A stretch of 64,000 nucleotides of DNA, taken from positions 2,852,001-2,916,000 of the forward strand of contig CATNEN010000029.1 of NCBI GenBank assembly GCA_950097015.1, written 5' to 3'. The stretch is from Macrostomum hystrix (lineage: Eukaryota > Animalia > Platyhelminthes). Below, one piece after another: positions 11,677 to 37,300 of the stretch; position 1 is the first letter of the stretch, and each line of letters starts with the position of its first letter. The notes below the pieces were generated by a model that worked only from the letters and a program-made list of their open reading frames with translations, was not told the origin of the DNA and ran no database searches. A program made the translations under genes and the position numbers.

Positions 11677-12006
11677 TCACTTTGTTGAATTCTTCAGATA
11701 GGCAATGAGATCGGCTCGCTCCTGTTCCTTCTTGAGTCCGGCAAACACCATCTTGGTGCCAGGTATGTACTTCTTAGGATTGAGCAGATACTCAAACAGG
11801 GTCTCCTCGCCCCAGGTGATGCCTTTGCCCTTGTTGGCGTCTGTATAGGAGAAGCCTGGCGCCTGACCAGTCTTCCGGCCGAACAGTCCATACAGATTGG
11901 GGCCCGTCTTGTGGGCGCCGCCCTTCTCAACAGTGTGGCACTGCAGGCAGCGCTGGACAAATATCTTTTTGCCCTTTTCAACATCTCCAGATGGAATCTT
12001 GCCCAT
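11677..12006 (-). CDS. CYCS: Cytochrome c
   Basis: [18 protein letters not shown] (CxxCH), [24 protein letters not shown]; uninterrupted 109-aa ORF. Confidence 0.98.
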
Positions 12007-12357
12007 GGTCAGATTTATCGATTTCTAGAGGTAGGCAGGTTTTGAGTAAAGTATTTGCTATTTCCGTCAGTTTTTCAGTCACCTAAAGGCCATATGCAAT
12101 GCCAATTTAAAGTAAAAATGTACGATTTAGTCTATGGCAGAAAGGCTCGCCAGTGTTTAACCCGATATAGACTCGTCAGGTATTTCTTTCTCGCATTCAC
12201 ATTTTTGTATCCGGTTCCCCTTTCCATTATATTGGCTGCGTTGAATGCCCTAGACAAAAATTCCTTAAGGCTGTGAGAAGGAACGCATGGAATTGACAGA
12301 GAATTTTTTTATTTTTGCATTATATTTTGTTTGTGAAAAAAAGTTTGTTTTTGCGTG

Positions 12358-13500: not shown

Positions 13501-13983
13501 ACTTCGTACAGTACAGTTCCAACTTCTAATATTGCAATTAGATAATGTTCAATGGTAGAACCTGTACTTCTTAAGTACCTGTACGACTCGAGCAGTCGCC
13601 TTGCAGTCCAGCCATCCCTATCCCCTTGGCTAGTTTTCAGCCAAGGGACTTCTGTAAATAATATCAGCGCTATACTCTGAGACCCCCGGTCTTAAAGCGA
13701 GGGAGAAACTCACAGCGCGTGGTTTGCAGTCTACTCTGCAATCTGGGGCTGATAGCGAGCTATCAGGAGCGATGCCACAGACTGAATGTTAGACACAATG
13801 CACACAACAGATAAGAAACTCCTTACTCAAATATATTCTCTAGCTTTTAGTTAGGCTCTAAAGCTATAGACTTTGTCATTTAGAATGAACTGTAGTTCTG
13901 TTTTACAAAGCTAATTACAAGTACAGTGACCAGCCGGCTGCGTTAACAATAGAAAAAAAATTTCCGCTTGCCGCCGAAAGAAA

Positions 13984-15353
13984 ATGCGATTAAAGTTATC
14001 CAAGCTGCACAAGTACCTGCTGCTCTGTTCGTCACTGTCCTGCAGTCTGCTGTTTTTCAGTCATTTCATGGCGAGTTAACATTAGGAAACCCGATAACTT
14101 AATGTAACTAAGTCTTTTTTATGTCTTGTAACTTGCTCTCATTCGCGCTTTTCACACTTTAATTCGCAAGTCGATTCAGGTCGGTCGCAGGTCGAGCTGG
14201 TTAGATGCCATTATGGATGAATACAACAACAGAAGAGAGCAGCCGAATAACTGTGACTCACAGAATGTCAACAATTTAGACTCAAACTGCACTCAGATCC
14301 CGCGAATCCTGCACTACACCTTCGCCAGCGAGAATGTGTACAGCAACTACCAAGACTTCATCAGCCAGTGCCTGGCGCTCAATCCTGACTGGCAGGTGTA
14401 CCTGTGGCGAGATGCCGATGGAGACCGCCTGATCAGGGATCATTATCCCGACTTCGCGGACAAGTTCGCTGGCTACCGGGGCGACCTGCAGAAGTCGGAC
14501 GCCGTTCGGTACGCAGTGCTGCATCGGTTCGGCGGTGAGTCTGTGCTCAAACACACAATGCTTATTCTTCGCGTCCAAGACCCCTACTAGTCCGCTTTGA
14601 AAACGCCTTTGCAGGTGTTTACCTGGACATGGACATTGAGTGCAAGCAGCCTCTGTTCCCCAGGCTGCAGAAGTACCAAGCATTTATCGATCGGGATCGT
14701 TGGGAGCAGACGACGCTGCTGTTCGGCAATCCCCTCTTGCTGATGAACTCGGCCATGGGATCAGTGCCCCGCCATCCGTTCTTTATGTTCATCCTGCATA
14801 AGCTCAAGGCCAATAACGGTCAGTCTCCAGTGTTTAGCACCGGTCCTGTGGCCCTGACGAAGATCTACGTGGACTGGCTGCGGTCCGGCGAGGCCAGAAG
14901 GGCGCCAGAAGTGACACTGCTTCCCTCGCAGGTGTTCTCGGGTCTCATTGACCAGAACAACCCAGCAGTTTTTACTCCGTGCTCGAGGCTACCAGCGGAG
15001 TGTAAGCGAACCATTTGCATTTTTCCTGAGCAAATGTCTTGCGCTTGTTAGCAAAAGTTTCATTTTCGGCCGCCGTTGCAGTCAGAACGCCAGAGCCGAG
15101 TCCGGAGCAGCGTCGGAAGCTCGCGGCCGAGCTGTCCGGCTTCGAGATTGACAGACCGAATTCTTACAGAGGCCGCGACGTGCGCAGGATGGCCTGCGCC
15201 AGCCTGGCTCTCACTGACTGGCGTCGCGGTCTCCATGACAACTGGACTATCGGAGTGCACAGGTTTCTGCACCTGGGCTACGGCTTCGCAGCGTCAAAGC
15301 GGGGCAACAAGTTCAACCTGCTAGCCAGGTTCCCCAGGTTGCGGCTTTATTAG
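13984..15353 (+). CDS. GT32/DXD glycosyltransferase (SUR1/MIPC-synthase-like fold), paralog 1, ~366 aa
   Basis: Exons 13984-14070, 14180-14534, 14615-15001 and 15082-15353 total 1101 nt in frame; intron 1 needs a GC donor. Type II anchor, IPRILHYTF, NPDWQVYLWRD, SDAVRYAVLHRFGGVYLDMD, FSTGP. Confidence 0.85.
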
Positions 15354-15654
15354 CCGGTCTCCTGACCGAAGACAATAAGGTTGTAAGGACGCTTAGCTCC
15401 TTTGATTTGTGATAACCGTTGAATTAGATATAAGATGTACACTTTTTTGTTGAGCATATAAAATCTGATTGCTTATTTACTGGAGTTTGATGGCCTTCTT
15501 GTCGAATGGAATCAGTTGTCTATAGTTCAAACACTACATTACGAACCCACAGGCGGAACCATTGATGATTCCATCGAAAAAATTAATAATCTATTTATAT
15601 TAATATAACACAAACGCAGTTTTATTCGTCATAGTCTATGTTATGAATAGACTA

Positions 15655-18600
15655 TGTCTAACAGATGAGAGCAGTGTCTTACACATGAGAGCCGTGTCTA
15701 GCATATGAGAGCCGTGTCTAGCATATGAGAGCCGTGTCTAACAGATGAGAGCAGTGTCTAACATATGAGAGCCGTGTCTAACAGATGAGAGCAGTGTCTA
15801 GCAGATGAGAGCCGTGTCTAGCATATGAGAGCCGTGTCTAGCATATGAGAGCAGTGTCTAGCATATGAGAGCCGTGTCTAACAGATGAGAGCAGTGTCTA
15901 ACATATGAGAGCCGTGTCTAACAGATGAGAGCAGTGTCTAGCATATGAGAGCCGTGTCTAACAGATGAGAGCCGTGTCTAACAGATGAGAGCCGTGTCTA
16001 ACAGATGAGAGCCGTGTCTAACAGATGAGAGCCGTGTCTAACAGATGAGAGCAGTGTCTTACAGATGAGAGCCGTGTCTAGCATATGAGAGCCGTGTCTA
16101 GCATATGAGAGCCGTGTCTAACAGATGAGAGCCGTGTCTAACAGATGAGAGCCGTGTCTAACATATGAGAGCCGTGTCTAACAGATGAGAGCAGTGTCTA
16201 GCATATGAGAGCCGTGTCTAACAGATGAGAGCCGTGTCTAACATATGAGAGCCGTGTCTAACAGATGAGAGCAGTGTCTAGCATATGAGAGCCGTGTCTA
16301 ACAGATGAGAGCCGTGTCTAACATATGAGAGCCGTGTCTAACAGATGAGAGCCGTGTCTAACATATGAGAGCCGTGTCTAACAGATGAGAGCCGTGTCTA
16401 ACAGATGAGAGCCGTGTCTAACATATGAGAGCCGTGTCTAACAGATGAGAGCCGTGTCTAACAGATGAGAGCAGTGTCTAACATATGAGAGCCGTGTCTA
16501 ACAGATGAGAGCAGTGTCTAGCATATGAGAGCCGTGTCTAACAGATGAGAGCCGTGTCTAACATATGAGAGCCGTGTCTAACAGATCAGAGCCGTGTCTA
16601 ACAGATGAGAGCCGTGTCTAACAGATGAGAGCCGTGTCTAACAGATGAGAGCCGTGTCTAACAGATGAAAGCAGTGTCTAACAGATGAGAGCCGTGTCTA
16701 ACAGATGAGAGCAGTGTCTAGCATATGAGAGCCGTGTCTAGCATATGAGAGCCGTGTCTAACAGATGAGAGCCGTGTCTAACATATGAGAGCCGTGTCTA
16801 ACAGATGAGAGCAGTGTCTAGCATATGAGAGCCGTGTCTAACAGATGAGAGCCGTGTCTAACAGATGAGAGCCGTGTCTAACAGATGAGAGCCGTGTCTA
16901 ACATATGAGAGCCGTGTCTAACAGATCAGAGCCGTGTCTAACAGATGAGAGCCGTGTCTAACAGATGAGAGCCGTGTCTAACAGATGAGAGCCGTGTCTA
17001 ACAGATGAGAGCCGTGTCTAACAGATGAGAGCCGTGTCTAACAGATGAGAGCAGTGTCTAGCATATGAGAGCCGTGTCTAGCATATGAGAGCCGTGTCTA
17101 ACAGATGAGAGCAGTGTCTAACATATGAGAGCCGTGTCTAACAGATGAGAGCCGTGTCTAACATATGAGAGCCGTGTCTAACAGATCAGAGCCGTGTCTA
17201 ACAGATGAGAGCCGTGTCTAACAGATGAGAGCCGTGTCTAACAGATGAGAGCCGTGTCTAACAGATGAGAGCCGTGTCTAACAGATGAGAGCCGTGTCTA
17301 ACAGATGAGAGCAGTGTCTAGCATATGAGAGCCGTGTCTAACAGATGAGAGCCGTGTCTAACAGATGAGAGCCGTGTCTAACAGATGAGAGCCGTGTCTA
17401 ACAGATGAGAGCCGTGTCTAACATATGAGAGCCGTGTCTAACAGATGAGAGCCGTGTCTAGCATATGAGAGCCGTGTCTAACAGATGAGAGCAGTGTCTA
17501 ACATATGAGAGCCGTGTCTAACAGATGAGAGCAGTGTCTAGCATATGAGAGCAGTGTCTTACAGATGAGAGCCGTGTCTAGCATATGAGAGCCGTGTCTA
17601 ACAGATGTGAGCCGTGTCTAGCATATGAGAGCCGTGTCTAACAGATGAGAGCAGTGTCTAACATATGAGAGCCGTGTCTAACAGATGAGAGCAGTGTCTA
17701 GCATATGAGAGCCGTGTCTAACAGATGAGAGCCGTGTCTAACATATGAGAGCCGTGTCTAACAGATCAGAGCCGTGTCTAACAGATGAGAGCCGTGTCTA
17801 ACAGATGAGAGCCGTGTCTTACAGATGAGAGCCGTGTCTAACAGATGAGAGCCGTGTCTAACAGATGAGAGCCGTGTCTAACAGATGAGAGCCGTGTCTA
17901 ACAGATGAGAGCCGTGTCTAACAGATGAGAGCCGTGTCTAACAGATGAGAGCCGTGTCTAGCATATGAGAGCCGTGTCTAACAGATGAGAGCAGTGTCTA
18001 GCATATGAGAGCCGTGTCTAACAGATGAGAGCAGTGTCTAGCATATGAGAGCCGTGTCTAACAGATGAGAGCCGTGTCTAACAGATGAGAGCCGTGTCTA
18101 ACAGATGAGAGCAGTGTCTTACAGATGAGAGCCGTGTCTAGCATATGAGAGCCGTGTCTAGCATATGAGAGCCGTGTCTAACAGATGAGAGCAGTGTCTA
18201 ACATATGAGAGCCGTGTCTAACAGATGAGAGCAGTGTCTAGCATATGAGAGCCGTGTCTAACAGATGAGAGCCGTGTCTAACATATGAGAGCCGTGTCTA
18301 ACAGATGAGAGCAGTGTCTAGCATATGAGAGCCGTGTCTAACAGATGAGAGCCGTGTCTAACATATGAGAGCCGTGTCTAACAGATGAGAGCAGTGTCTA
18401 GCATATGAGAGCCGTGTCTAACAGATGAGAGCCGTGTCTAACATATGAGAGCCGTGTCTAACAGATGAGAGCCGTGTCTAACATATGAGAGCCGTGTCTA
18501 ACCAGATGAGAGCCGTGTCTAACAGATGAGAGCCGTGTCTAACATATGAGAGCCGTGTCTAACAGATGAGAGCCGTGTCTAACAGATGAGAGCCGTGTCT

Positions 18601-19802
18601 AACAGATGAGAGCCGTGTCTAACATATGAGAGCCGTGTCTAACAGATGAGAGCCGTGTCTAACATATGAGAGCCGTGTCTAACAGATGAGAGCCGTGTCT
18701 AACAGATGAGAGCCGTGTCTAACAGATGAGAGCCGTGTCTAACAGATGAGAGCCGTGTCTAACATATGAGAGCCGTGTCTAACATATGAGAGCCGTGTCT
18801 AACAGATGAGAGCCGTGTCTAACAGATGAGAGCCGTGTCTAACAGATGAGAGCCGTGTCTAACAGATGAGAGCCGTGTCTAACAGATGAGAGCCGTGTCT
18901 AACAGATGAGAGCCGTGTCTAACAGATGAGAGCCGTGTCTAACAGATGAGAGCCGTGTCTAGCATATGAGAGCCGTGTCTAACAGATGAGAGCCGTGTCT
19001 AACAGATGAGAGCCTTGTCTAACATATGAGAGCCGTGTCTAACAGATGAGAGCCGTGTCTAGCATATGAGAGCCGTGTCTAACAGATGAGAGCCGTGTCT
19101 AACAGATGAGAGCCGTGTCTAACATATGAGAGCCGTGTCTAACAGATGAGAGCCGTGTCTAACAGATGAGAGCAGTGTCTAGCATATGAGAGCCGTGTCT
19201 AGCATATGAGAGCCGTGTCTAACAGATGAGAGCCGTGTCTAGCATATGAGAGCCGTGTCTAACAGATGAGAGCCGTGTCTAACAGATGAGAGCCGTGTCT
19301 TACAGATGAGAGCCGTGTCTAACATATGAGAGCCGTGTCTAACAGATGAGAGCCGTGTCTAACAGATGAGAGCCGTGTCTTACAGATGAGAGCCGTGTCT
19401 AACAGATGAGAGCCGTGTCTTACAGATGAGAGCCGTGTCTAACATATGAGAGCCGTGTCTAACAGATGAGAGCCGTGTCTAGCATATGAGAGCCGTGTCT
19501 AACAGATGAGAGCAGTGTCTAGCATATGAGAGCCGTGTCTAACAAATGAGAGCCGTGTCTAACAGATGAGAGCCGTGTCTAGCATATGAGAGCCGTGTCT
19601 AGCATATGAGAGCCGTGTCTAACAGATGAGAGCCGTGTCTAACATATGAGAGCCGTGTCTAACAGATGAGAGCCGTGTCTAACAGATGAGAGCCGTGTCT
19701 AACAGATGAGAGCCGTGTCTAACAGATGAGAGCCGTGTCTAACAGATGAGAGCCGTGTCTAACAGATGAGAGCCGTGTCTAACAGATGAAAGCCGTGTCT
19801 AG
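15655..19802. repeat. Satellite, 20-bp unit GAGCCGTGTCTAACAGATGA, ~205 copies
   Basis: Array of about 4.1 kb with recurring variant units. Confidence 0.98.
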
Positions 19803-20454
19803 CTGATTTTTTGTCTAACGGGTTTCAAGTTGTTCTATCAAAGAGATTATAGTTCTTTTGAAAAATTCATCCAGTTTGACAGTTCTAAAACCTGTTTAAT
19901 GAGCGACATTGACTTCGAAAGAAAATTTTGCTGTTTTGTGCAGATTAAGTTGCGGATAAGACAAGAGCATTTAATGCAGCATCTTTCTCTATTGTTTGTC
20001 ATTTGGGCGTACACTCAAGCCTTCTCGCTGCCGCCAATAGATTGGATGCTAAGTTAAGCGTGCCTTAGGCCACGGTCGCTCAAATAAATACGCGGGGAAA
20101 ATGTACACTTGTACACTCACACTGTACAGGTCTTCCCTTGCCTGCCGAAAGTTGCCTCTCTCCCACGGCGAGAAGAATGGCCAATTGGGCTTTATGGGTT
20201 TGAGAAAGAGAGGAAGTCCATATTTGAAAACGTCTTTTGTTTCAAAGGAATAATAGAGGCTGCAATATCACAGGGCTTCTCTCTCCGTTTCAGCTGCCAT
20301 TTCAGTTGGCCTTACACTAGGCGGGTTTGAGTCTAATCAACAACTATGTCACAATGAACAGCAGACACTCACTTCTAAGTGTGGGGTAAGATAACAGCTT
20401 TAATTCTCTCATTTAATTAAAACTTACACAGAATTAATCGAAAATATAGAATAG

Positions 20455-21300
20455 CTGAGATCCCTGTCTAACAGGTAACATCCCCGTCTAACAGGTGAGA
20501 TCCCTGTCTAACAGGTAAAATACCCGTCTAACTGGTGAGATCCCTGTCTAACAGGTGAGATCCCTGTCTAACAGGTGAGATCCCTGTCTAACAGGTGAGA
20601 TCCCTGTCCAACAGGTGAGATCCCTGTTTAACAGGTGAGATTCCTGTCTAACAGTTAAGTGATCTCGGTCGAACAGTTGAGAGTTCCCTGTCTAACAGGT
20701 GAGAGATCCCTGTCTAACAGGTGAGATCCATGTCTAACAGTTGAGAGTTCCCTGTCTAACAGGTGAGAGATCCCTGTCTAACAGGTGAGAGATCCCTGTC
20801 TAACTGGTGAGATCCCTGTCTAACAGGTTGGAGATACCTGTCTAACAGTTGAGATCCATGTCTTACAGGTGAGAGATCCCTGTCTAACAGGTGAGATCCA
20901 TGTCTAACAGTTGAGAGTTGCCTGTCTAACAGGTGAGAGATCCCTGTCTAACAGGTGAGATCCATGTCTAACAGGTGAGATCCCTGTCTAACAGGTGAGA
21001 TCCCTGTCTAACAGGTGAGATCTTTGTCTAACAGGTTGGAGATACCTGTCTAACAGGTGAGAGATCCCTGTCTAACAGGTGAGAGATCCCTGTCTAACTG
21101 GTGAGATCCCTGTCTAACAGGTTGGAGATACCTGTCTAACAGGTGAGATCCATGTCTTACAGGTGAGAGATCCCTGTCTAACAGGTGAGATCCCTGTCTA
21201 ACAGGTGAGATCCATGTCTAACAGGTGAGATCCCTGTCTAACAGTTGAGAGATCCCTGTCTAACAGTTGAGAGTTTGCTGTCTACCTGGTGAGTTCCATG
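20455..21300. repeat. Satellite, 20/22-bp unit GATCCCTGTCTAACAGGTGA(GA), ~40 copies
   Basis: Tandem array; the unit differs from the 15655-19802 unit at 3 of 20 positions. Confidence 0.96.
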
Positions 21301-22063
21301 TCTATGTATTTAAACATTTTGTCAATTATTTAGTTTTTTAGTTCCACAAAACTCATATAGAAACTTTCTTCTTCAACCGATGCACAATAGCAACCAAGCA
21401 AACATAAAATTAGCCTTGTGGCTTGGCCAACTGATTTTACAAAAATCTACGTAATTTTCGTAATGAACAAATAATAAACTATAAAATGACTGGAAAATTG
21501 AGTTACTAGATCTAGCTTTTGACTGCTATTGTGCTTCTTGATAAAGAAACTAAAAAAATTAAGATCAATTGTTAATGAATAAGGCCTTCTAAAATTTTTT
21601 GAAGCAACATGTTTTGTAAGAATTTTCTTACAAATTAAGAATTGGGGGATAACTGAAAAATTATTGAATGAACAGTTAAAAATAGACTGTATTTTAATGA
21701 TAATACTCCACCCTTTCGACTCTCCCACGCCACACCCTTTGCCGACGGTATGGAATGATTTCGTGCCATTTTAAAACTCAAGGGTGTAGACTGAACCCCC
21801 TTTCCCGACTGAAGCTTTTCACTAATGCCACGAGGACTAATCTATGGCTTCTAGCCATAGACAATACTATACTGTATAGTGGCAGTGGGGAAAGGCTGAT
21901 GTACGCTCGAAGCCAAATGTTAAGGCCATGGACACAAAATGTAATGAAGTTTGACCATAGAGATATATTTTTATTTTAAACACCGGAAGGAAATTTAATT
22001 CACAACTTGTTTCCTCTTGTCCCTGTCCCTCTTTGTATATTCTATTCGAAACTGAAACTGAAA

Positions 22064-23458
22064 ATGAGCGAAGACTTCGATAGCCATTCAGTTGCTAGTT
22101 GGTTTACTGCCGATGATGATTCTGTAGATGGATCTATTGATTAGCTCTCCACTGATGAAGAAGATCAAGGCGAACCTGACGGAAATTGGAACCTTGTTCA
22201 AGAAGGCACAGATTCTCGACCAGCACCACTGCCAGAGTTTCTTGGTGTGCCTGTAGTCCAGCCTGGGTTGCAGCTACCTGAAGTGGCCGATGGAAATGAG
22301 ACTGCTTTCATCAAGCTCTACTTGACGGACGAGTTGCTTGAAAACATAAAAACTTGGACGAACTTAAAAGCATGGAACACGTACCATGAAAATTTAGATA
22401 GTGGAACCGTCCCCAAATTTGTGCTTAACTGGAAGGACTGCACTGTCGACGAGGTGAGAAAACTTATCGGAATCATGCTTCTGATGGGTCTTGATAAAAC
22501 GCCAGAAATATCCAGCTACTGGTCAAATGATCCGGCCTTCCATTGTGCGTTTTTGGCCGAGCCATGCTCTCTATCTAGAGTCAGGTTCAAGCAGATTTTG
22601 TCCCGCCTGCGCTTTTATGATTGTACGGAAATTCCAAATCCAGCTGGGCCTCTAGCTAAGATGCATCCTTTTCTGCAGCAGGTGAAAGAGCTGTGCAGCA
22701 CCATCTATATGCCGCGTCAACGGCTCTCGATTGATGAGAGTCTTGTTCTGTACAAAGGAAGACTACAGTTCAAGCAGTACATTCCCACAAAGAGAAATAG
22801 ATAATGCATAAAACTTTACTGCCTGTGCGAATCTGAGTCCAGCTACTTGTGGAATTTTGAGATTCACTCATCTGCTGAGGCCAATCAGCATTTTGGCGAT
22901 GGACTTGGCTGCCAGAATTTATCGATGAGCGAGAGAGTTGTAGCTGCGCTTTGCCGAAATTTGCTCATCTTGGTTACCACGTATTTATGGACAGCTGGTT
23001 CACTTCTCAAAGATTGGTCGCCTGGCTGCTGCAGCGGGACACCTTGCTCACTGGCACAGTGCGCAAGAACCGTGGCATCCCTGGCTGCTGCAGCGGGACA
23101 CCAGCAAATTGGAACAAGGACCATGTTCTTGTTGGACAGAGCTGGCTCGGCAGAATGCAGACAGATTCAGGGTGTCCGCCGTGGCGGTGGCGTGCAGGTT
23201 GTCCCTAAGCCAACAAGCATTTTAGCTTAAACTGCCAGTATTGGTGGCGTCGATCACCTGGACTCAGCTTTGCACCCGTACTTGGCCAATCGAAAAAGCA
23301 TTCGCTGGTTTCACAAACTGGGTTTTCATCTAATCCTTTTGCTAGTTCGAAATTCCTGGATTGTGTATCAACAGTCTGGCGGCAGCAAAACATTTTTGAA
23401 GTTTTTGAGACTGGCAATCAAGACTTTGGTTGAGGACACGGGTGCTGCTATAGTCTGA
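22064..23458 (+). pseudogene. piggyBac transposase fossil
   Basis: DDD motifs SIDESLV, MDSWFTS and GGVDHLD, plus KGRLQFKQYIPTK. In-frame stops at ~22142 and 22802, frameshifts, no C-terminal Cys-rich domain, no clear TIRs. Confidence 0.9.
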
Positions 23459-24422
23459 CTATAGTCAGTCTATGTCTGGACCAATAAATATTTAGCGAAA
23501 TTTGGAGTTCGCAACAAAAAACGATAAGCTTCTAATCAAAATGAATGCAAAACGTGTCAATATAAAACAAAGAAATTGTCAAGATTTAGTTGCTAATTAT
23601 ATAAATTTGACTATTTTTATACTGGGAACTCCAAAACCTAGACAATTGAAAATGTTTTTTTTTTCAGTGCAGATAAAGAAATAATTTATAGGCCTGCTAT
23701 TTTCATTTTTCATTTTTTCGGAAACTGGTAACAAAACAGATAACGGGAAACACACCGCTGGTAACGACTCGTTACCACTATTTTCAATACCAGCCCGTAG
23801 GAACGCGAAAAAGTAACGTTGCAAAAAAGTAACGATCGTTACCAATTTGGTAACTCGTAATGAGTAACGCACACTAAACTGCAACTTTGAAACGTTAAAC
23901 TTGTTAACTTACATATGCTTTTCTTTTATCAATATTACCTTCTTCATTGTCTTAGCTTTGTATTGATTCCTTTGATGAACGTTTTCGTTAGGATTCTTAT
24001 TTTTCCGGTTGTTTATACACCATGCAGTTTTTGTGCTTACCCAGCTGTTTGGACATGTTTATTGCTAGTCATGTGAACTCTAGACTGTACAATTGTCACA
24101 ATTTTAGTTTCTGAAGTTATTGTTCCATGGTACTGTAAAAATACTGGTCAAAAGTTTATTCTACATTATATGCTATATTTCGTTATGCAATAAACTGCGC
24201 TTGACTCGATATCGTGCCATAACAGTCGGCGAGGGCCTTGCCTCGATATAGCATAACGAAATGTAGCATATAATATGGCATAAACTTAGAAGTACTTAAG
24301 TGACGATTTATACTGACTGGCTCGTACGAGTATAAGCAATGCTGGCTTAAATCAATATTTCAACACTCAAACAGGTTTCTCTATAGGCAGCGCGGTTGAG
24401 TGCAGTGACTCAGCTAGTGGCA

Positions 24423-25945
24423 ATGGCACTAGTGCCTCGAAACGGATGGTCTCCGAAGTTATCACCGGCAAAGCTATTTACACTTGGCGGGCTGCTAAGT
24501 GCCTGTTTAGTGATTGGCTTTCAGCTGTCACAGCATAGTATGGTGAGTGTAAGCTGAAGTAGAAGGGACCGTACACACTAAATAGGTCAGATTTTTGTGT
24601 GGCTGGTTTTTGATCTCCAACATTGATCTCCAGATATCACTGATGCTTGCCGTCTGTCTAGCAGTACTTTAAACGATTCACCGCGAACATTAATAGTGTA
24701 ACGCCAAATAACCCGAAATTGTTCACTTCCAGCTCATTAAAAGGTATCTGCCACCTTCCGATTATGGAGATCAGCCCAGCGGCAGCCAAGTAAATGGCTC
24801 GGTAAGAAGCGATGTCCAATTAGCTAAAGAGAAAAATCTTCTCAGAAATTCAACCTTTTGCGCTCAGATCCCGCGAATCCTGCACTACACCTTCGCCAGC
24901 GAGAATGTGTACAGCAACTACCAAGACTTCATCAGCCAGTGCCTGGCGCTCAATCCTGACTGGCAGGTGTACCTGTGGCGAGATGCCGATGGAGACCGCC
25001 TGATCAGGGATCATTATCCCGACTTCGCGGACAAGTTCGCTGGCTACCGGGGCGACCTGCAGAAGTCGGACGCCGTTCGGTACGCAGTGCTGCATCGGTT
25101 CGGCGGTGAGTCTGTGCTCAAACACACAATGCTTATTCTTCGCGTCCAAGACCCCTACTAGTCCGCTTTGAAAACGCCTTTGCAGGTGTTTACCTGGACA
25201 TGGACATTGAGTGCAAGCAGCCTCTGTTCCCCAGGCTGCAGAAGTACCAAGCATTTATCGATCGGGATCGTTGGGAGCAGACGACGCTGCTGTTCGGCAA
25301 TCCCCTCTTGCTGATGAACTCGGCCATGGGATCAGTGCCCCGCCATCCGTTCTTTATGTTCATCCTGCATAAGCTCAAGGCCAATAACGGTCAGTCTCCA
25401 GTGTTTAGCACCGGTCCTGTGGCCCTGACGAAGATCTACGTGGACTGGCTGCGGTCCGGCGAGGCCAGAAGGGCGCCAGAAGTGACACTGCTTCCCTCGC
25501 AGGTGTTCTCGGGTCTCATTGACCAGAACAACCCAGCAGTTTTTACTCCGTGCTCGAGGCTACCAGCGGAGTGTAAGCGAACCATTTGCATTTTTCCTGA
25601 GCAAATGTCTTGCGCTTGTTAGCAAAAGTTTCATTTTCGGCCGCCGTTGCAGTCAGAACGCCAGAGCCGAGTCCGGAGCAGCGTCGGAAGCTCGCGGCCG
25701 AGCTGTCCGGCTTCGAGATTGACAGACCGAATTCTTACAGAGGCCGCGACGTGCGCAGGATGGCCTGCGCCAGCCTGGCTCTCACTGACTGGCGTCGCGG
25801 TCTCCATGACAACCGGACTATCGGAGTGCACAGGTTTCTGCACCTGGGCTACGGCTTCGCAGCGTCAAAGCGGGGCAACAAGTTCAACCTGCTAGCCAGG
25901 TTCCCCAGGTTGCGGCTTTATAACCAGTCGGTGCCGAGAGGCTGA
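24423..25945 (+). CDS. GT32/DXD glycosyltransferase, paralog 2, ~368 aa
   Basis: Exons 24423-24542 (MALVPRNG..LFTLGGLLSACLVIGFQL anchor), 24733-24801, 24868-25105, 25186-25572 and 25653-25945 total 1107 nt in frame, with canonical splice sites. Confidence 0.85.
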
Positions 25946-26130
25946 ATTTCACGTGAATATTCTCCGCATGTCTGTGTAAAATAGCATGTGCCTTGGTGTC
26001 AAAAAGTACTTTTGGGTGGTGAATGGGACACGTGATTATTGGTTATATATAACAAAATTTTATATAACGCTGACGGTGTTTTTACTCTCAGTTGAAACAA
26101 TTCAATTTTCAATCGAAGCCAAGTAACCCT

Positions 26131-28282: not shown

Positions 28283-28320
28283 GCAATCAAACAAAAACCA
28301 GGTGGCACATCAAGATTTGA

Positions 28321-31300
28321 TTAGCTATCGTCACGCAGAAACTGACTGTCAACAGAGTCGTCCAGGTACAGGCTGGCTGCGAATACAATGTCCCGCTTAA
28401 TCAGCTGGCTGGCAGTCTCAAACTTTTCGCTCAGCAGACTGGCGCCTATCACTCGGGCAGCGTTGCGAGCATCTTTAAGCAGCTCGTCTAGGCGTTGAAT
28501 GCAGCGCACAATGATGCCCTCCTGCTGATCGGTCAGGCTGGCTATGTCACGGAAACTGGTGCCCCTGCAGGATTGGCGGGTGATGCAAAATGTCTGGCTT
28601 ATTGGTTATTTTTTACACCATTAACCAAATGTAGACTAAGCTCTGTACTAGGGGGGTCGGTGGCAGAGTGGTTAGCGCGTTTGCCTCTCGCGCCAAGGTC
28701 CCTGAGCTCGATTCCGCGGTGAGGCCACATTTATTTTAGCCTGTCGTGTAATTTAAGCCCTTGAGGGCCAACCTCCAAAGCACAGTACACTGCCTTACGA
28801 TGTAAGGCACACCTGTGTGAGCGTATGCCTGCGTACAGTATCTGTGCGTATGTGCTAGTGCAAAATTATTATTATTATTATTATTATAAGCTCAGTACTG
28901 TACCTGGCCCACTCGTAAACGACTCTCATGAGAGCGGGCCGGACACTGTCCGGATCCAAATCCGGCACCAGTCCCAGCTGGCACTCAGACTGCAGGGCCT
29001 GAGCAGTCTCGGCCGTTTCAATCACCCGGTCTAGTGCAAGGCGCAGCTGCTCCGGCAGCTCGCGGAGCATCTCGGCCACGGGGTCGCGACCGGCTCCGCT
29101 GGCGCCGCCGCCGCCGCCGCTTTTATCGGCGGCCTGCACCGACGGAGTTTTCCCAGCAGGTGCAGACTTCGGCTGCGGAGGTGGCGGCGTAGGCGCCTGC
29201 TGAAGCCGGGCCTCGCAGACGAAACAGGAGAATAGCGCGGCCAGGTGAGACGGCTCCAACTGGTCGAAGGCGTTCTGGAACATCAGCTCGGTGATGAGGA
29301 TGCACTGGCTGCTTAGCTCGCAGGCGGCCTGGCCCTTGAGGCGGATCTGGTCGCCAGGGCTAACAAACTCCATGCGGCGGAGCACCTGAGGAGTTTACAT
29401 TGCGCAAGTTGGAGATATGTACATTTGAATTGGGGTTGGGGTTAGCAGATATGTACATTTGAATTGGGGTTGGGTTAGCAGATATGTACATTTGAATTGG
29501 GGTTGGGGTTAGCAGATATGTACATTTGAATTGGGGTGGGTTAGCAGATATGTACATTTGAATTGGGGTGGGTTAGCAGATATGTACATTTGAATTGGGG
29601 TTGGGGTTAGCAGATATGTACATTTGAATTGGGGTTGGGTTAGCAGATATGTACATTTGAATTGGGGTTGGGGTTAGCAGATATGTACATTTGAATTGGG
29701 GTGGGTTAGCAGATATGTACATTTGAATTGGGGTGGGTTAGCAGATATGTACATTTGAATTGGGGTTGGGGTTAGCAGATATGTACATTTGAATTGGGGT
29801 TGGGGTTAGCAGATATGTACATTTGAATTGGGGTGGGTCCGTAGATGTTTTTTTAAATTGGTTTTGCTACGACTTTGGAGTTGTAATCGGCATGGTAATG
29901 GAAAAATGCGCACCTGCAAGCGCTGCTTGTACTCGGACAGGTACTGTAGACTCTCATCCGACAGCTGATGCCGGAGCTGATCTTGCTGCCACAGCAGCTT
30001 CTGGCGGTTCAGAGCCTGGGCGAAGTGCGCATCGAAACTGGGACAGGCGAGGCACTCGTTGGAGATCAGGTCCCGCTGTGACATGGTCAACTGAGCGAAC
30101 AGCTCGGTCTGTCAGTCGGTGAAGGAGTTATGAAAATAACAGCTAACAGCCTGTGCTGAGATTCGAACTCCCGACCTCTCGGTCAGAAGTCCGAAGCTTT
30201 ATAACCACTGGCCTAAAAGTCCGATAGTTTAATTAGAACTACGCAAGTATTCAGGCAGCGAAATTGCTCACTTGGTCGACTTTTCTAAGTCCCATTCCGT
30301 TAAACGGATCCAGCAGTGGCGAGGCGGCACCAGCGGCGGCGGCGTGGTACTTGGTGCGCAGCAGGTCGGCCAGCTCCTGAGCCACCTGGCTGACTGTCTG
30401 GCCGGGCGGCAAGTCGGCAAATCTGGGCATCTCGCGCCGCCTGAAATCTTCAAAAATAACTTTGACACTGTCATCGCCGCGCAGGCTGCCAGCTGTCTGC
30501 TGGCCGACGCCGTCTAGCCAGTCAACGGCGGGCAGTTCAACTAGCTCCGGTTTATATTGGGCGGCTGGTTGGGCAAAGTCAGCCGGACAGACCGGCTCCA
30601 GCCACAGATCTGTGCTAGAAGACAGCTTTGGAGGCCGTGTGGCTAGCGGGCCGAGTGTTAGCAAGCTCATGCGCTCGCCTTCAAGTCGGAGAAGGACGCC
30701 GACTCGGCGAAGGCGCGGCTCGCCCGGCCAAGGCCGCATCACGATTAGCTGGCCTGGACGTGGCCTGGAGAGGAAACAGACAAAGAAATTTAGCGCTAAT
30801 CAATTGATCAAGGGACACTACTGCTAGTAGAGTGTTTTTTTCGGTGCCAGCTGCGATTCTAGTTGTAACTCTTGCTGCGATTCTAGCTGTAGCTCTTGCT
30901 GCAATTCTAGTTGTAGCTCTTGCTGCGATTCTAGTTGTACCTCTTGCTGCGATTCTAGTTGTACCTCTTGCTGCGATTCTAGTTGTACCTCTTGCTGCGA
31001 TTCTAGTTGTACCTCTTGCTGCGATTCTAGTTGTACCTCTTGCTGCGATTCTAGTTGTACCTCTTGCTGCGATTCTAGTTGTCCATCTTGCTGGGATTCT
31101 AGTCACGATTCTAGATAAGACTACTGCAAGGCTTCTAGTTAAACGCATCCTCACCTGAACCCGTTTAGAATCTCCCGAGCCGCCAGCTCCCGCAGCCGGC
31201 CATGCTCCTTTAGAGTGGCCAGGTAGCTGCCCATGGCTATGCCGCCGCACACTCGACAGGACGGCCTGCCGGCTTCGGCGATGCACACCTCCAGCTGCTC

Positions 31301-34300
31301 CAGCTGCCGCTGTCTGTCGCCGAGCATCGCCTGGCTGCTGTCCTCCGAGAAGCTGCGCCGGAGAACCTCCTCAACGCGCAGGGCTCTGCCGCGCAGCAGG
31401 TTGAGTATCATGGCGTAGGTGACACGAAATTTCGACTCCAGCTTAGTGGCCTTGCCGAGAGCCATGTTCTCCAGCGTGGATGCGTCGGGCACGTCGGCTT
31501 TGCAGACAACCACAACCGTACCGGTGGCGTCGAGGCCGCGACGGCCGGCCCGGCCAGCCATCTGGGTGTACTCGCCGGGCAGTAGGGCCCGACGCTGCCG
31601 TCCGTCGTGCTTCACCACAGTGTCGAATAGTACAGTCTTGGCTGGCATGTTGACGCCCATGGCGAATGTCTCGGTGGCGAATAGAATTTTTACCTGTGAG
31701 AAAGAGAGGGCTTCAGATATATATAATAGGAATCAAGGGATTGCTGAACTGGGATCTACAGTATTTTAACAATAGTACTAAAAAACATTTTGCCGCCGGT
31801 TTTTTTAAACCAAGGGGGGGAATTCCCCCCTGACAATTGTTTGTGCTGCACCCGAACGGAGCAAGCACACGAAACTCAAGAACACGGGCCAACTTTTTGT
31901 TGCGCATCTTCTGAAACAAGAATCAAGGCGCCAGCCCTTCAGATCGTCGAGATATTCAACGGCTCTGGCCGAAGGTCAGATTTTTCCCATAGGTGCTAGT
32001 GAATTTTATACCCCGATACACGAATTTGCACTGCGGCTCAGTGCGGCCGTGCGAATCCTTCCAAACTTTATCAGCAGGTCACCCGAATGTGCCTGCATCA
32101 TCTCCTACTATGGTGGTAACCGACTTTGATCTAGACGGAGCTTTAACAAGTAGTAGTTGAGTGTAGCCCAATATCGGAACTTTATCAGCGAACGTACAGA
32201 AATTTGCTTTTGGGACTCCGTAGCCAGCTGGAGGCACCCTGCTGACTGTGCTGACGGCGTCGAGGTGGTGAATGATTGGTTGACAGACTATGCGAGGGTC
32301 CTATGGTTGAGCTTGGTACAGCTGACAGCTGATAGATTACATAGGTGACAGCTGATAGATTACATAGGTGACAGCTGATAGATTACATAGGTGACAGCTG
32401 ATAGATTACATAGGTGACAGCTGATAGATTACATAGGTGACAGCTGATAGATTACATAGGTGACAGCTGATAGATTACATAGGTGACAGCTGATAGATTA
32501 CATAGTTGACAGCTGATAGATTACATAGGTGACAGCTGATAGATTACATAGGTGACAGCTGATAGATTACATAGGTGACAGCTGATAGATTACATAGGTG
32601 ACAGCTGATAGATTACATAGGTGACAGCTGATAGATTACATAGGTGACAGCTGATAGATTACATAGGTGACAGCTGATAGATTACATAGGTGACAGCTGA
32701 TAGATTACATAGGTGACAGCTGATAGATTACATAGGTGACAGCTGATAGATTACATAGGTGACATTACATTGCGATCTATTTATTATGCACAGACTGGTC
32801 GATGAATGTACATTGATTATTGAAACGATTTGATAGGTTGAGGGCTAAAACATGCACTGACACGCAGGTGCATATGCGGTGAGTAAACACTGCTAGAGTG
32901 AGACAGCGCACGAGAGAAAGGGAGTAAGATAACATAGAAAGTAAACGAGGTCTAAAGCATAAAAGTGCAACCGCAAACCCAACAGATTACATAGGTGACA
33001 GCTGATAGATTACATAGGTGACAGTTTTCTTACCAGACCGCGCTGAAACAGCAGCTCAACGACCTCCTTGAGAATAGGCAGTACGCCACTGTGGTGCGCC
33101 CCCAATCCCTTGGCCAGCATGCGCTGAAAGAATTCCACCTGGGGCAGCAGCCGATCCTCCGGACGAAGCTTGGCCACTGCGGCGCGAAAGAATTTATGGG
33201 TTCGATTCTTTTCGGCAGCCGTGTTCAAGTCCAGTTTCTGAAGCGCTGTCAGGCTCTGCACCATGGTGTCAATGCGCTGCCTGCAGGGGGGTTCGATCTG
33301 AATTAGAAGAACCTGGATCGGCCCTCAAATACTAGCGTATCTAGATCGGCCCTCAAATACTAGCGTATCTAGATCGGCCCTCAAATACTAGCGTATCTAG
33401 ATCGGCCCTCAAATACCAATGCATCTAGATCGGCCCTCAAATACCAATGCATCTAGATCGGCCCTCATAAACCAATGTGTCCAGATCGGTCATCAAATAG
33501 CTAAATACGACGATAATTTAATTGTCAAGACTCGCCTAGAGAACATGAAGCAGACAGCTGGCATGCCTTGCCGGTCCTTCAGCATACTGATCACAGACAG
33601 CCAGACATTGCGTTCACTCTTGGGATCCAAGTGACCGCCAGGTCTTGAGTTTTTAAAACCACCGCCGCCGCCGCCACTGCCCTTGCCGCCGCCACTGCCC
33701 TTGCCGCCGCCGCCGCCCTTGCCGCCGCCGCCAGATTCGCGCTGCTTCTTAGACAGCACAGCCGCTTCGTATCCGTCGGAGCGCAGAAATCTACCCTGTG
33801 CGTTGATGAACTGAAAAAGATCCTTGCTAGTGGCGGAGCTGTTGCCGGTGTACAGGTAGTGCTCCAGCGGCACTGGTCGCTTACTAGTGCTAATCACGTA
33901 GATTCTGCGCCGTTTGATGGAGCCGACCCAATTAGCAAACTGCTCAGTGTTGGGCACGGTCGCGCTGAGCAGTATTATGCCTACGTGTGGCGGCAGTAGA
34001 ATGAGCACCTCCTCCCACACGACGCCTCGCTCAGTGTCATTAACGTAATGCACCTCGTCAAAGATGACCCATTCGAGTTCGCGCAGAACGTCGCTGCCGC
34101 CATAGAGCATTGAACGCAGAATCTCCGTGGTCATGATGAGGCATGAAGCGTTTTGATTCACCTGTGTCAAAAAGAGAACTGGTTGAAGATCATTGAATAA
34201 CCTATAGGGCCGCTCCAGGGGGGTCGGTGGCAGAGCGGTTATCGTGTTTGCCTCTCGCACCAAGGTCCCGAAGTTCGATTCCACGGCGAGGTCAGAAGGC

Positions 34301-37300
34301 TTGGGGGCTTGTCGTACAATTGACACCCTTGAGGGCCAACCTCCAAGGCACAGTGAAGTGTACACTGTCTGACGATCAGAAAGTCAGGGCAGACAGGTGT
34401 ACACACCTGTGTGAGCGTGTGCCTGCGTACAGTATCTGTGTGCGTGTGTGCTCAGGAGTCAGAGAAATGGCCAGAATTGCCTCCTCGCTGGCTGTGGGTC
34501 TAGTGTCACTAAATGATGTGCCACTGCCCGCAGCCCTCCTGCAATCATCAATATTAATATTATAGGGCCGCTTCTGTCCATAATACAGTTGTTGGCTTTA
34601 GGGGAGCTTGCAGACCAGTGGCTATAGTTTAGGATTTCTAGCCGAGAGGTCAGGAGTTCGAATCTCCCGGTACCATAATACCAGCACCTCCCCAGTCCAC
34701 AGACGGTACAGCAGTACACAGCCTTTGGAATCGCCGAAGAGGGCCGAAATGCCATAGAATTGTTCTCACCTGAACGTCGCCAGTAACGAGGCCGACATTT
34801 AAAGTGCCGAATCGAAGCCTAAAGTCGTGAAATTTCTGATTAGACAGCGCTTTAATTGGCGAAGTGTAAATAACGCGAGTCTGACGTCGCAACGACTGGG
34901 CGATGGCGTACTCGGCCACGACCGTCTTGCCAGCCGAGGTGTGCGCTGCCACGAACACATCGAGCCGCTTTTCCAGGTGGCAGATAGCGTGCTTCTGAAA
35001 ATTGTCCAACTCGAAGCTCCAGGTAAGGGCTGGAAATGGCACCTGGGCGCTCATGTCCGGCACAGGCTTGCTGGAGTCCACCGCTACGGCCCATTCGAAC
35101 TAAATCAAACAGAGGAAGGGCGAGACAGCGAAATAGTTAAAAAAATGTATTGAAATAATTATTAATAAATTACACCTGCCCCGATTGGTCCAGATGAGCA
35201 GCCGACAGCACAGCCGCAGCTATTGCGCGGCGCATCTGAAGGCTGCGTACGGCTGTTCAGTCCATGGACTGGGGGGACGCCACATTCACCCTCAATTACC
35301 ATCTATTTAACAGCTGGGTGAACTGAAGCAATGCAGAGTTAAGTGCCTTGCTAAAGGACACAAATGACAAGGACACGAATTGTCCGAATGGAGGCGGGAA
35401 GCGAACCCCCGACCACCAATTCGTGAGTCCGACGCTATAACAACTAGGCTAAAACCCCTAGACTTAGGCCTACTTTGGTACTATATGGCTTATTTATATA
35501 AATAAAGTTTACTGGCTCTAGGCCACGTTCTGTGATAGAGTTATAAGGCCTACTGGTTTGAGAGTTGGATTCACGACTTGAAGATCGGGGATTCGCATTC
35601 CAACTCAAATTGAAATATTTGTGTATTTTAGCTACAATTACCCCAAGTGATACTGGTACACATTAAACAGCTGGGTGAACTAAAGCAATGCAGAGTTAAT
35701 ATAAGTGTCTAACTAAAGGACACATATTGTACCGGTTGAGTCGGGAATCGAACCCCCAACCTTCAATTCGTGAGTCCCATGCTCTAACCACAAGGCGCTA
35801 CAACCCCGTGAAACAGTACAAGGACTTCTAAAAACAGGCATAAATGCTACATATAAAAGTCCTTGCATGATGTCACATTTTTTCGAGAGACATGGATGCG
35901 GAAATGTGTGCGCAGTATTAAGTTAAGGCCAATGCTAGGCTTGCGCACCTTGGGCTGCGGAGCCGAGTTAGCCATCTGGCGCAGCTGACTTTGCTGCCGA
36001 CCGACGACAACGGAGCCGCTGGGCGAGGCTGACAACATCGGAAGCTTGCCGGCGGGCGTGGAGGTCACCGAAGTCATCACTGCCGCCTGATCGGCAGCCG
36101 ACTGATGCCGGCTTCTAAGGCTAGGCGCCGAGTCCGGCAAATCGGCCAGGGCTTCAGCGGCGGCAACTTGGCCGCAGCTCACCTGGCGTTGAAGGCCGAA
36201 GTCGCTGCGCAATGTTATTATAGGGAAAGTTCGTTAGTAATTGACGATTGAGGATCGACAAGAGGAGACATCCGACAGGGGAAAGACAAGCTTGACATAA
36301 AACTAGGAATATGTATTTAAAATTAGAGAGACCAATCGACATGAAAATTCAGAACACGGGCTAAAAGTTTCGGCTCTATCCGATCCGATGACACAACTTC
36401 CAGAATCACGGAACATCGACATCGACGAAATATCCAAGGATTCTTGTCGGGGTGTCTGGTGGCAAAAACCACCAATATAGGTATAGTTTTTCTGCTTAGA
36501 AAATTTCATCATGTAACCATGCCGGCGATCGCTTTTTATAATATCGCATTGATTATATCGTTAATTATTATATTGTTGAACCAGTATGGATTCGCCCTAA
36601 ACAAAGCAATCTTATTCGACCTTGTCACCTGGGTCTTCGGCAAGAATCGCTGAATATCTCGACAATGCTGAAGTCGGACGGCTTTGATATTTAGTTCACG
36701 GTAAAATGCGGAAAGTTTTGATCCATGCGGTGGATTTTTGACGACAATTGGTTATTTGGTATGGGAGCTGTCAGTGCGTATTTGAAGGCAGTGGGTATTT
36801 GAAATACGTCGTCTTTCCCCAGGGGAAAACAGCCCCAGGTCTTTGTACTTGTTAAAGCAGGGGTCGGCAACCTCCGGCCCGCGAAGCTCCTAAATCCGGC
36901 CCTTAGCTCCTCCTAACACCTACTCTACAGTACACCCTATCTCATCTCTCCCCTGTCTCACCTCTCCCCTGTCTCACCTCTCCCCTGTCTTATCTCTCCC
37001 CAGTCTCATCTCTCCCCTGTCTTATCTCTCCCTGTCTTATCTCTCCCTGTCTCATCTCTCCGCTGTCTCACCTCTCCCCTGTTTTATCTCTCCCTGTCTT
37101 ATCTCTCCCCTGTCTTATCTCTCCCCTGTCTCACCTCTTCCCTATCTCATCTCTCCCTGTCTTATCTCTCCCCTGTCTTATCTCTCCCCTATCTCATCTC
37201 TCTTGCGTCGTATCTCCACCGTCTCATCTCTCACCTGACTGATCTCTCCTGTGTCTCATCCACAGATACTATAATAACTATAATAACACTTATTATAGTA

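What the first reader, a model, noticed from the sequence alone, without database searches (positions are those of the whole stretch)
14292..25921. Paralogs with divergent N-termini share a near-identical 1.06-kb catalytic tract, introns included
Seen: 14292-15350 and 24863-25921 (offset 10571) differ at only one position that I found (TGG/CGG, W to R), including two whole introns. The anchor exons and stems are unalignable by eye, paralog 2 has an extra stem intron ending at the tract boundary, and the stop codons differ. The shared ATG|G(T/C)GAGT junction suggests an old duplication. Inference: recent gene conversion homogenised the catalytic domain while targeting or anchor modules stayed distinct, giving one enzyme with two addresses. 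A recent domain duplication behind a pre-existing anchor exon is the alternative.
Basis: partly seen in the sequence, partly recalled or inferred. Interest (0 to 1): 0.75.

Follow-up and report, generated by a model that had tools for sequence, protein, structure and literature searches.

The report
Gene-converted tandem flatworm glycosyltransferase pair
Two neighbouring glycosyltransferase genes of the flatworm Macrostomum hystrix have unrelated-looking membrane anchors but a catalytic part that is letter-identical, introns included, most likely because one copy keeps overwriting the other (gene conversion), a well-known process.

Summary
Window 14292-15350 and 24863-25921 are 1059 bp with one mismatch (15243 T/C, W/R), present only twice in the genome, with edges that fall to random similarity. 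The window is Macrostomum hystrix. Both genes are GT32 (PF04488, DXD) type II glycosyltransferases lying between a cytochrome c gene and a DEAD/DSHCT helicase gene; all three M. lignano homeologous loci have one GT32 gene in that slot. The tract equals the whole folded catalytic domain of the orthologue (residues ~55-353), no more and no less. Other tandem GT32 clusters in this genome show the same 5' edge and clear conversion mosaics (exon A dS 0.08 versus exon B dS 0.64-0.71 in the same gene pairs). Best reading (about 0.7): a lineage-specific whole-gene tandem duplicate whose catalytic domain is kept identical by interlocus gene conversion while anchor, stem and UTRs drifted apart. The same pattern is published for mammalian FUT1/FUT2/Sec1, and this scan has noted gene conversion on other DNA of this genome. 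Ordinary: a new member of a known kind.

The parts
11677..12021 (-). cytochrome c gene, upstream synteny anchor
   Evidence: tblastx 90% aa to the cytochrome c gene upstream of the single GT32 gene in M. lignano L016
13984..14070 (+). paralog 1 (P1) exon 1: 29-codon signal anchor (MRLKLSKLHK + LLLCSSLSCSLLFFS), ends ATG|GCGAGT (GC donor, phase 0)
   Evidence: best 15-aa KD 1.96; only 5% of random stop-free 29-codon stretches reach 1.9; splicing inferred, no RNA data
14071..14179 (+). P1 intron 1 (109 nt, GC-AG), inferred
14180..14291 (+). P1 stem, unique to P1, continuous in frame with the tract (…NNLDSNCT)
   Evidence: single-copy in genome
14292..15350 (+). tract copy 1: exon A 14297-14534, intron 14535-14614, exon B 14615-15001 (DXD = LDMD), intron 15002-15081, exon C 15082-15350; TAG at 15351-15353
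   Evidence: (PF04488 25.3 bits, cut-off 23)
15243..15243 (+). only internal difference: T (Trp) in P1 vs C (Arg) at 25814 in P2; a CpG C>T change; middle position of an N-x-T sequon
   Evidence: Arg in all three M. lignano copies, and the column varies across the family (S,N,A,R,G,E)
15655..21304 (.). spacer: 20-bp minisatellite x207 (15655-19801) and a related 20-bp array (20456-21304)
22178..23443 (+). spacer: piggyBac-like transposase remnant
   Evidence: PF13843 E=1.6e-28; tblastx
24423..24542 (+). paralog 2 (P2) exon 1: 40-codon signal anchor (…LFTLGGLLSACLVIG…), ends ATG|GTGAGT, phase 0
   Evidence: KD 2.14
24543..24732 (+). P2 intron 1 (190 nt, GT-AG), inferred
24733..24862 (+). P2 stem, unique to P2.
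24863..25921 (+). tract copy 2 (same exon and intron layout, offset 10571)
25922..25945 (+). P2-specific C-terminal tail NQSVPRG plus TGA; the M. lignano orthologue also has a tail with a sequon after …LY
28294..37986 (-). DEAD/DSHCT helicase gene, downstream synteny anchor (extent approximate)

Best explanation
P1 and P2 are a lineage-specific tandem duplicate of one GT32 (Och1/A4GALT-type, GT-A fold, DXD) Golgi-type type II glycosyltransferase gene of Macrostomum hystrix. After a whole-gene duplication, the weakly constrained parts (promoter, signal-anchor exon, intron 1, stem, C-terminal tail, 3' UTR) diverged beyond recognition. The constrained catalytic domain kept enough identity to go on recombining, and repeated interlocus gene conversion between copies originally only a few kb apart keeps it identical, carrying the two short internal introns along. 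The one internal difference (Arg to Trp in P1, a CpG transition at a family-variable site) arose after the last conversion event. Shown: tract identity, sharp edges, copy number, gene family, synteny, the single-copy outgroup, and conversion elsewhere in the family. Inferred: that P1's 5' module descends from the same ancestor, that both genes are expressed, and that different anchor/stem modules give different localisation or regulation.
For: (1) 1059 bp with 1 mismatch and identical introns; only two copies in 220 Mb. (2) Immediate flanks are single-copy DNA, so the edges are not repeat-insertion breakpoints. (3) The tract corresponds to residues ~55-353 of the M. lignano orthologue. In its AlphaFold model that is exactly the confident globular domain; residues 27-51 (stem) have pLDDT <50 and the tail is also low. 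Random duplication breakpoints would rarely hit both limits. (4) P1 has its own ATG-started, basic-then-hydrophobic 29-codon exon ending in a phase-0 donor, then a 39-codon open stem in frame. This is the same 'anchor exon | phase-0 intron | stem+A exon' layout as P2 and the orthologue. (5) All three M. lignano loci show cytochrome c – one GT32 – helicase, and no annotated gene there could have donated an anchor. (6) Independent proof of conversion in the family: in cluster C38:3.33 Mb, exon A dS is 0.08 but exon B dS is 0.64-0.71 for the same gene pairs, and identity blocks start 6-12 nt before exon A. A second cluster has blocks starting at -16, and our pair starts at -5/-9. (7) Published precedent with the same anatomy (PMC4398370).
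Against: P1 and P2 anchors, stems, intron 1 and flanks show no significant similarity, so common descent of the 5' modules rests on architecture alone. No background divergence can be measured for this pair, because everything alignable is converted. P1 intron 1 needs a non-canonical GC donor, and no RNA evidence was available. The assembly was Pilon-polished with short reads (PMC10468722), which could have erased a few true differences inside the tract. The only internal difference lies 108 nt from an edge.
Confidence: 0.7

Rival explanations
1. Recent partial duplication: a ~1.06-kb piece of P2 (the catalytic exons plus their introns) was copied very recently about 10 kb upstream, landing in frame behind a pre-existing or fortuitous anchor/stem ORF and creating a young chimeric gene. 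No earlier P1 catalytic domain ever existed.
For: Very sharp edges with no graded decay of similarity. P2 looks ancestral, with Arg at the variable site and a C-terminal tail like the orthologue, whereas P1's frame stops on the very first codon after the tract. The outgroup has one gene.
Against: Both breakpoints would have to fall within a few nt of the fold limits, and the copy would have to land in frame behind an ATG-started signal-anchor exon with a phase-0 donor. By rough estimate that joint chance is well below 1e-3. The M. lignano intergenic region has no annotated gene to supply such an exon. Other clusters of the family share the same 5' edge through demonstrable conversion.
Confidence: 0.17
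2. Mechanism as in the best explanation, but P1 is not a second working 'address'. It is a silent or decaying copy, with a weak GC donor and no C-terminal tail, whose catalytic part merely looks intact because P2 keeps overwriting it.
For: GC-AG intron 1, a marginal TM segment (KD 1.96), loss of the tail with its sequon, a derived Arg>Trp change. Conversion involving inactive or pseudogene GT paralogues is described for Sec1 (PMC4398370).
Against: P1's 5' ORFs are open and correctly phased. The single change is at a family-variable position. No disabling mutation was found anywhere.
Confidence: 0.25
3. Assembly or polishing artefact: the two tracts are really more diverged, or are one locus, and were homogenised or duplicated by canu/Arrow/Pilon.
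For: The assembly was polished with multi-mappable Illumina reads. The only internal difference lies near an edge, where reads anchor uniquely.
Against: The tract is about 1 kb with unique flanks on both sides, far shorter than PacBio reads. One difference was retained. The flanks are distinct, single-copy and carry distinct 5' exons. Reported QV is 42.8. Similar blocks at 88-98% identity elsewhere in the family were not homogenised.
Confidence: 0.05

Closest known systems
Gene conversion among mammalian alpha1,2-fucosyltransferase paralogues FUT1/FUT2/Sec1 (PMC4398370)
   Same: Linked Golgi type II glycosyltransferase paralogues whose catalytic-domain coding sequence is homogenised by gene conversion, while the transmembrane and stem regions are too divergent to align.
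   Different: A different CAZy family (GT11, not GT32). The conversion was inferred across 23 species, whereas here there is one species plus one distant outgroup. Here the tract covers the entire domain including two introns, at 99.9% identity.
Variable-first-exon clusters UGT1 / GCNT2 / protocadherin (PMC1885805)
   Same: The same end result: several N-terminal modules, each with its own promoter, attached to one identical C-terminal or catalytic part.
   Different: There the constant exons exist once and are shared by splicing. Here the constant part is physically duplicated and kept identical at the DNA level. Membership: not a member.
GT32 glycosyltransferases (yeast Och1, animal A4GALT/A4GNT); solved structure 9n3s
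   Same: PF04488 match above cut-off, DXD motif, N-terminal signal anchor. The orthologue model's best PDB match is Och1 (Foldseek E=4.4e-9).
   Different: Only 14-18% identity to solved structures. No Gb3_synth (PF04572) hit, so the automatic UniRef name 'alpha-1,4-N-acetylglucosaminyltransferase' is not backed here. Donor and acceptor are unknown.
Other gene-conversion mosaics noted by this scan in the same genome (SLC23, TEP, NACHT, EGFR, fibrinogen-lectin, ZAP-like, HELZ2-like pairs)
   Same: Old tandem or inverted paralogues with sharply bounded near-identical blocks (AI notes, not checked by me).
   Different: Different gene families. In the SLC23 case the introns were reported as diverged, whereas here the introns are converted too.

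Membership tests
GT32 / Pfam PF04488 Gly_transf_sug | Profile match above Pfam's gathering score | tested here: met
   Exon A alone: 25.3 bits vs cut-off 23; M. lignano orthologue P0001: 55.8 bits, E=7.5e-15
GT32 / Pfam PF04488 Gly_transf_sug | DXD metal/nucleotide-sugar motif after the …RY..L..FGG.Y motif | tested here: met
   …SDAVRYAVLHRFGG|VYLDMD… identical in both copies; D139 and D141 invariant in a 21-sequence alignment
GT32 / Pfam PF04488 Gly_transf_sug | GT-A fold closest to a solved GT32 enzyme | tested here: met
   Tested on the orthologue model (pLDDT 82.6), not on the window's joined protein: top hit Och1 9n3s, E=4.4e-9, followed by other retaining GT-A enzymes
GT32 / Pfam PF04488 Gly_transf_sug | Type II topology: short cytoplasmic tail, signal anchor, luminal stem | tested here: inconclusive
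   Hydrophobic 15-aa windows with KD 1.96 (P1) and 2.14 (P2) after basic residues; stems carry N-x-S/T sequons. Splicing of the anchor exons was not verified
GT32 / Pfam PF04488 Gly_transf_sug | Retaining alpha-glycosyl transfer activity; donor and acceptor specificity | not testable with these tools
   Needs an enzyme assay
A4GALT/A4GNT subfamily (Gb3 synthase-like) | C-terminal Gb3_synth domain (PF04572) | tested here: not met
   No such hit at E<=1 on exons B and C or at E<=0.1 on P0001
Interlocus (non-allelic) gene conversion / concerted evolution | Near-identical tract with abrupt edges inside otherwise diverged paralogues, with non-coding DNA inside the tract homogenised too | tested here: met
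   99.9% identity inside, including two introns; random similarity outside
Interlocus (non-allelic) gene conversion / concerted evolution | Flanks are homologous but anciently diverged (a whole-gene duplicate) | tested here: inconclusive
   No significant sequence similarity; only shared exon architecture, phase-0 intron after the anchor, and a Cys three residues before the domain
Interlocus (non-allelic) gene conversion / concerted evolution | Discordant synonymous divergence between segments of one gene pair | tested here: met
   Met for sister clusters of the same family (exon A dS 0.08 vs exon B dS 0.64-0.71). Cannot be measured for P1/P2 itself
Interlocus (non-allelic) gene conversion / concerted evolution | Paralogues group by species, not by gene, when compared with a species that has both | not testable with these tools
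   Only M. lignano was reachable and it has one gene per locus

The most novel reading that the evidence does not exclude
In the greatly expanded GT32 family of Macrostomum (at least 48 exon-B matches in M. hystrix), conversion may be systematically delimited to the fold. It would stop within about 5-16 nt of the first catalytic residue in three independent clusters, acting as a DNA-level 'constant region' that lets anchor/stem (localisation) modules and promoters diversify freely. That would be a duplicated-gene equivalent of variable-first-exon clusters such as UGT1, and P1/P2 would then be one enzyme delivered to two places or tissues.
Probability: 0.25. Interest if true: 0.45.

Novelty: new member of a known kind. 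Interest (0 to 1): 0.25.

Why it matters
This is a clean, well-bounded example of concerted evolution in a free-living flatworm model genus. It shows that the near-identity does not date the duplication, which matters for anyone dating duplicates or calling 'recent' paralogues in this genome. It is also a warning for annotation and short-read mapping in the large GT32 family. If both genes are expressed, the pair is a natural experiment on how the cytoplasmic tail, TM segment and stem of a Golgi glycosyltransferase direct an otherwise identical enzyme. It does not reveal a new mechanism.

Tried and rejected
(1) Residual homology just outside the tract: blastn word 7 and a boundary-anchored extension alignment against 1000 shuffles and 1000 random loci were not significant. 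My by-eye impression of graded decay was not supported. (2) Homology of anchor exons and stems (P1/P2/M. lignano): local BLOSUM62 scores against 5000 shuffles gave P=0.07-0.97. (3) Edges as repeat-insertion breakpoints: rejected, because the adjoining 105-790 nt are single-copy. (4) A mobile cassette: rejected, only two copies. (5) RNA genes in the identical introns: no Rfam hit in 11000-28500. (6) A second, hidden M. lignano paralogue: P0002 (2262 aa) and P0141 (1389 aa) are fused models of the same gene. (7) Sister-species orthologues: the full-length search with P0001 returned only M. lignano proteins plus one alga. (9) Toxin relation: the weak TcdA/TcdB-type hits are below threshold and reflect the generic GT-A/DXD fold. 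(10) The window is not human. The M. lignano orthologue served as a proxy for folding.
Full report
OBSERVATION. The two stretches 14292-15350 and 24863-25921 (offset 10571) are 1059 bp long and differ at one base: 15243 is T in copy 1 and C in copy 2, giving TGG Trp versus CGG Arg. Ungapped extension drops to background on both sides. BLAST adds four more bases (TGC plus one A/G mismatch), giving 1063 bp at 99.81%. The genome (220 Mb, 42 contigs) contains only these two copies. Two 80-nt GT-AG introns (14535-14614 and 15002-15081) lie inside the tract and are identical. Flanks share nothing detectable, either by blastn with word size 7 or by an extension alignment anchored at each edge and compared with shuffles and random loci (P=0.45 and 0.24).

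WHAT THE GENES ARE. Exon A (14297-14534) matches Pfam PF04488, the GT32 'sugar-binding region containing DXD motif', above the curated cut-off. The motif …RYAVLHRFGG|VYLDMD… is split by the first intron. I read the gene models exon by exon, by reference.
- P1: exon 1 is 13984-14070 (29 codons, basic tail plus hydrophobic segment, ending ATG|GCGAGT). Intron 1 is 109 nt. A second exon from 14180 runs through a 39-codon stem straight into exon A. Exons B and C follow, with TAG immediately after the tract.
- P2: exon 1 is 24423-24542 (40 codons, ending ATG|GTGAGT). Intron 1 is 190 nt. The stem starts at 24733. The same exons A-C follow, then seven extra codons (NQSVPRG) and TGA.

ORGANISM AND ORTHOLOGUE. 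A full-library HMMER search with exon B found two outstanding hits at 60-61% identity and everything else at 45% or less. These are Macrostomum lignano GT32 proteins. The assembly statistics (220,453,370 bp, 42 contigs, longest contig 35,345,953 bp) are exactly those published for Macrostomum hystrix, a canu PacBio assembly polished with Arrow and Pilon (PMC10468722; contig length). The window is not human.

SYNTENY. In all three M. lignano homeologous loci the order is cytochrome c (-), one GT32 gene (+), DEAD/DSHCT helicase (-). In the window the order is cytochrome c (11677-12021, -), P1, P2, helicase (from 28294, -). The long M. lignano models P0002 and P0141 are fusions containing the same gene, not a second paralogue. 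The duplication is therefore specific to the M. hystrix side, or one copy was lost before M. lignano's polyploidisation. Synonymous divergence from M. lignano is about 1.0, which leaves ample time for unconstrained DNA to randomise.

The orthologue has the same architecture: a 26-codon anchor exon, a phase-0 intron, stem+A in one exon, then B and C with introns at the same positions. It has Arg at the variable site, so P1's Trp is derived (a CpG C>T change). That residue is the middle of an N-x-T sequon and varies freely in the family. The orthologue also has a C-terminal tail after …LY, as P2 does, and a Cys three residues before IPRILHYTF, as both P1 and P2 do. The segment is in frame and stop-free, and most family members have no intron there, so it is probably coding or optionally retained.

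WHERE THE EDGES FALL. An AlphaFold model of the orthologue (21-sequence alignment, mean pLDDT 82.6) has four parts: a TM helix, a disordered stem (residues 27-51, pLDDT <50), a confident globular domain from about residue 56 to 353, and a floppy tail. Its best PDB match is the GT32 enzyme Och1 (9n3s), followed by other retaining GT-A transferases (sequence-level support). The tract maps to orthologue residues ~55-353, so it is the entire fold and nothing else. The DNA immediately outside the tract is single-copy: at least 790 nt upstream and 105 nt downstream of P1, and 575 nt upstream and about 206 nt downstream of P2. The edges are therefore not repeat-insertion breakpoints.

THE FAMILY SHOWS CONVERSION DIRECTLY. 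The genome has at least 48 exon-B matches, none above 48% aa identity to this pair.
- In the three-gene cluster at C38:3.33 Mb, exon A is 96-98% identical in all pairs, but exon B is only 78% identical between one gene and the other two.
- Nei-Gojobori dS is 0.08 for exon A against 0.64-0.71 for exon B in the same gene pairs. One duplication date cannot produce that, so it is the signature of gene conversion.
- Those blocks begin 6-12 nt before exon A. A second cluster (C38:13.77-13.86 Mb) has exon-A blocks beginning at -16, and one further pair in that cluster (L021-L024) begins at -183.
- A pair at C38:2.70 Mb is homogenised only in exon B. A tandem pair at C38:13.82 Mb shares a 1189-bp gene-body block at 98.5%.
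- A plain 6-kb inverted segmental duplication at C3:9.53 Mb shows what an unconverted recent duplicate looks like.
The P1/P2 edge at -5/-9 fits the recurrent edge seen in those two clusters. The anchors and stems in the C38:3.33 Mb cluster also differ while the catalytic exon is near-identical.

MECHANISM. The best reading (confidence about 0.7) is a whole-gene tandem duplication in the M. hystrix lineage. Weakly constrained parts then decayed, and repeated interlocus gene conversion was confined to the region that selection kept similar, sweeping the two short introns along. The spacer is now 9.5 kb but consists largely of two 20-bp minisatellite arrays (4.1 and 0.85 kb) and transposon remnants, so the copies were once closer. 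By established knowledge, proximity favours conversion.

Against a recent partial duplication: both breakpoints would have to coincide with the fold limits, and the copy would have to land in frame behind an ATG-started signal-anchor exon with a phase-0 donor. Only 5% of random stop-free 29-codon stretches in this window are as hydrophobic, and the outgroup has no annotated gene in the interval to supply such an exon. In favour of that rival are the very sharp edges, the lack of measurable homology between the 5' modules, and P2's more ancestral look. I give it about 0.17.

An assembly or polishing artefact is unlikely (about 0.05). The tract is much shorter than the PacBio reads, the flanks are unique, one difference survived, and family blocks at 88-98% identity were not homogenised. 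Pilon polishing could nevertheless have removed a few true differences.

FUNCTION. Both copies encode the same intact catalytic domain of a GT32 retaining glycosyltransferase; donor and acceptor are unknown. The automatic UniRef name 'alpha-1,4-N-acetylglucosaminyltransferase' is not backed by a Gb3_synth domain. The copies differ in cytoplasmic tail, TM segment, stem length, sequons and C-terminal tail. These are regions that, by established knowledge of Golgi enzymes, influence sub-Golgi localisation. 'One enzyme, two addresses' is therefore reasonable but untested. P1 could instead be a weakly used copy kept intact by conversion (GC donor, no tail), and I put that at about 0.25.

COMPARISON AND NOVELTY. 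The same anatomy is published for mammalian FUT1/FUT2/Sec1: conversion along the catalytic domain, with TM and stem too divergent to align (PMC4398370). Variable-first-exon clusters such as UGT1 and GCNT2 reach the same end by splicing (PMC1885805). This scan's earlier notes report conversion mosaics in several other tandem families of this genome (AI notes, not checked by me), so the scan has found this process before on other DNA. The finding is a real, clean new member of a known kind. Interest is about 0.25.

LIMITS. Rfam found nothing in 11000-28500.

Noticed in passing
window 15655-19801 and 20456-21304 (also 692-1619, 12360-13499, 27710-28282, 38637-39591, 50758-51777 and others): At least 15 minisatellite arrays with 15-35-bp units in 64 kb. 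The largest is a 20-bp unit repeated 207 times, with strong GC skew, between the two GT32 genes. The next array shares the TGTCTAACAG core. A 30-bp array abuts the 3' end of the helicase gene.
   Followed up: no
window 22178-23443: piggyBac-like transposase remnant (PF13843, E=1.6e-28). A related element sits in an intron of the M. lignano helicase gene.
   Followed up: partly
window 8256-11087 (-): Gypsy-type Gag-PR-RT-IN open frame of 943 aa between cytochrome c and upstream DNA, already noted by the scan as s1-366078. Pfam domains confirmed; no RNase H hit was listed.
   Followed up: partly
window 24152-24287: Inverted repeat with 41-nt arms (88% complementary, 54-nt loop), 135 nt upstream of the P2 start codon. 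It is part of a repeat that also occurs at C1:12.96 Mb.
   Followed up: partly
window 26128-26700: Young dispersed repeat with 94-99% identical copies on C38, C3 and C2, starting about 206 nt after the P2 tract.
   Followed up: no
G000 C38:3.33 Mb, 2.70 Mb, 13.77-13.86 Mb, 13.82 Mb, 14.2 Mb; C3:9.528-9.544 Mb (loci L019-L035): The GT32 family has at least 48 exon-B matches, many in tandem clusters with gene-body-limited identity blocks (88-98.5%). There is also one plain 6-kb inverted segmental duplication at 99.2%.
   Followed up: partly
window 46999-52421 (+); 28294-~38000 (-); 11677-12021 (-): Conserved neighbours: Integrator subunit 7 (INTS7_N/C), a DEAD/DSHCT (SKIV2L/MTR4-like) helicase with minisatellites in its introns, and cytochrome c (90% aa to M. 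lignano).
   Followed up: no
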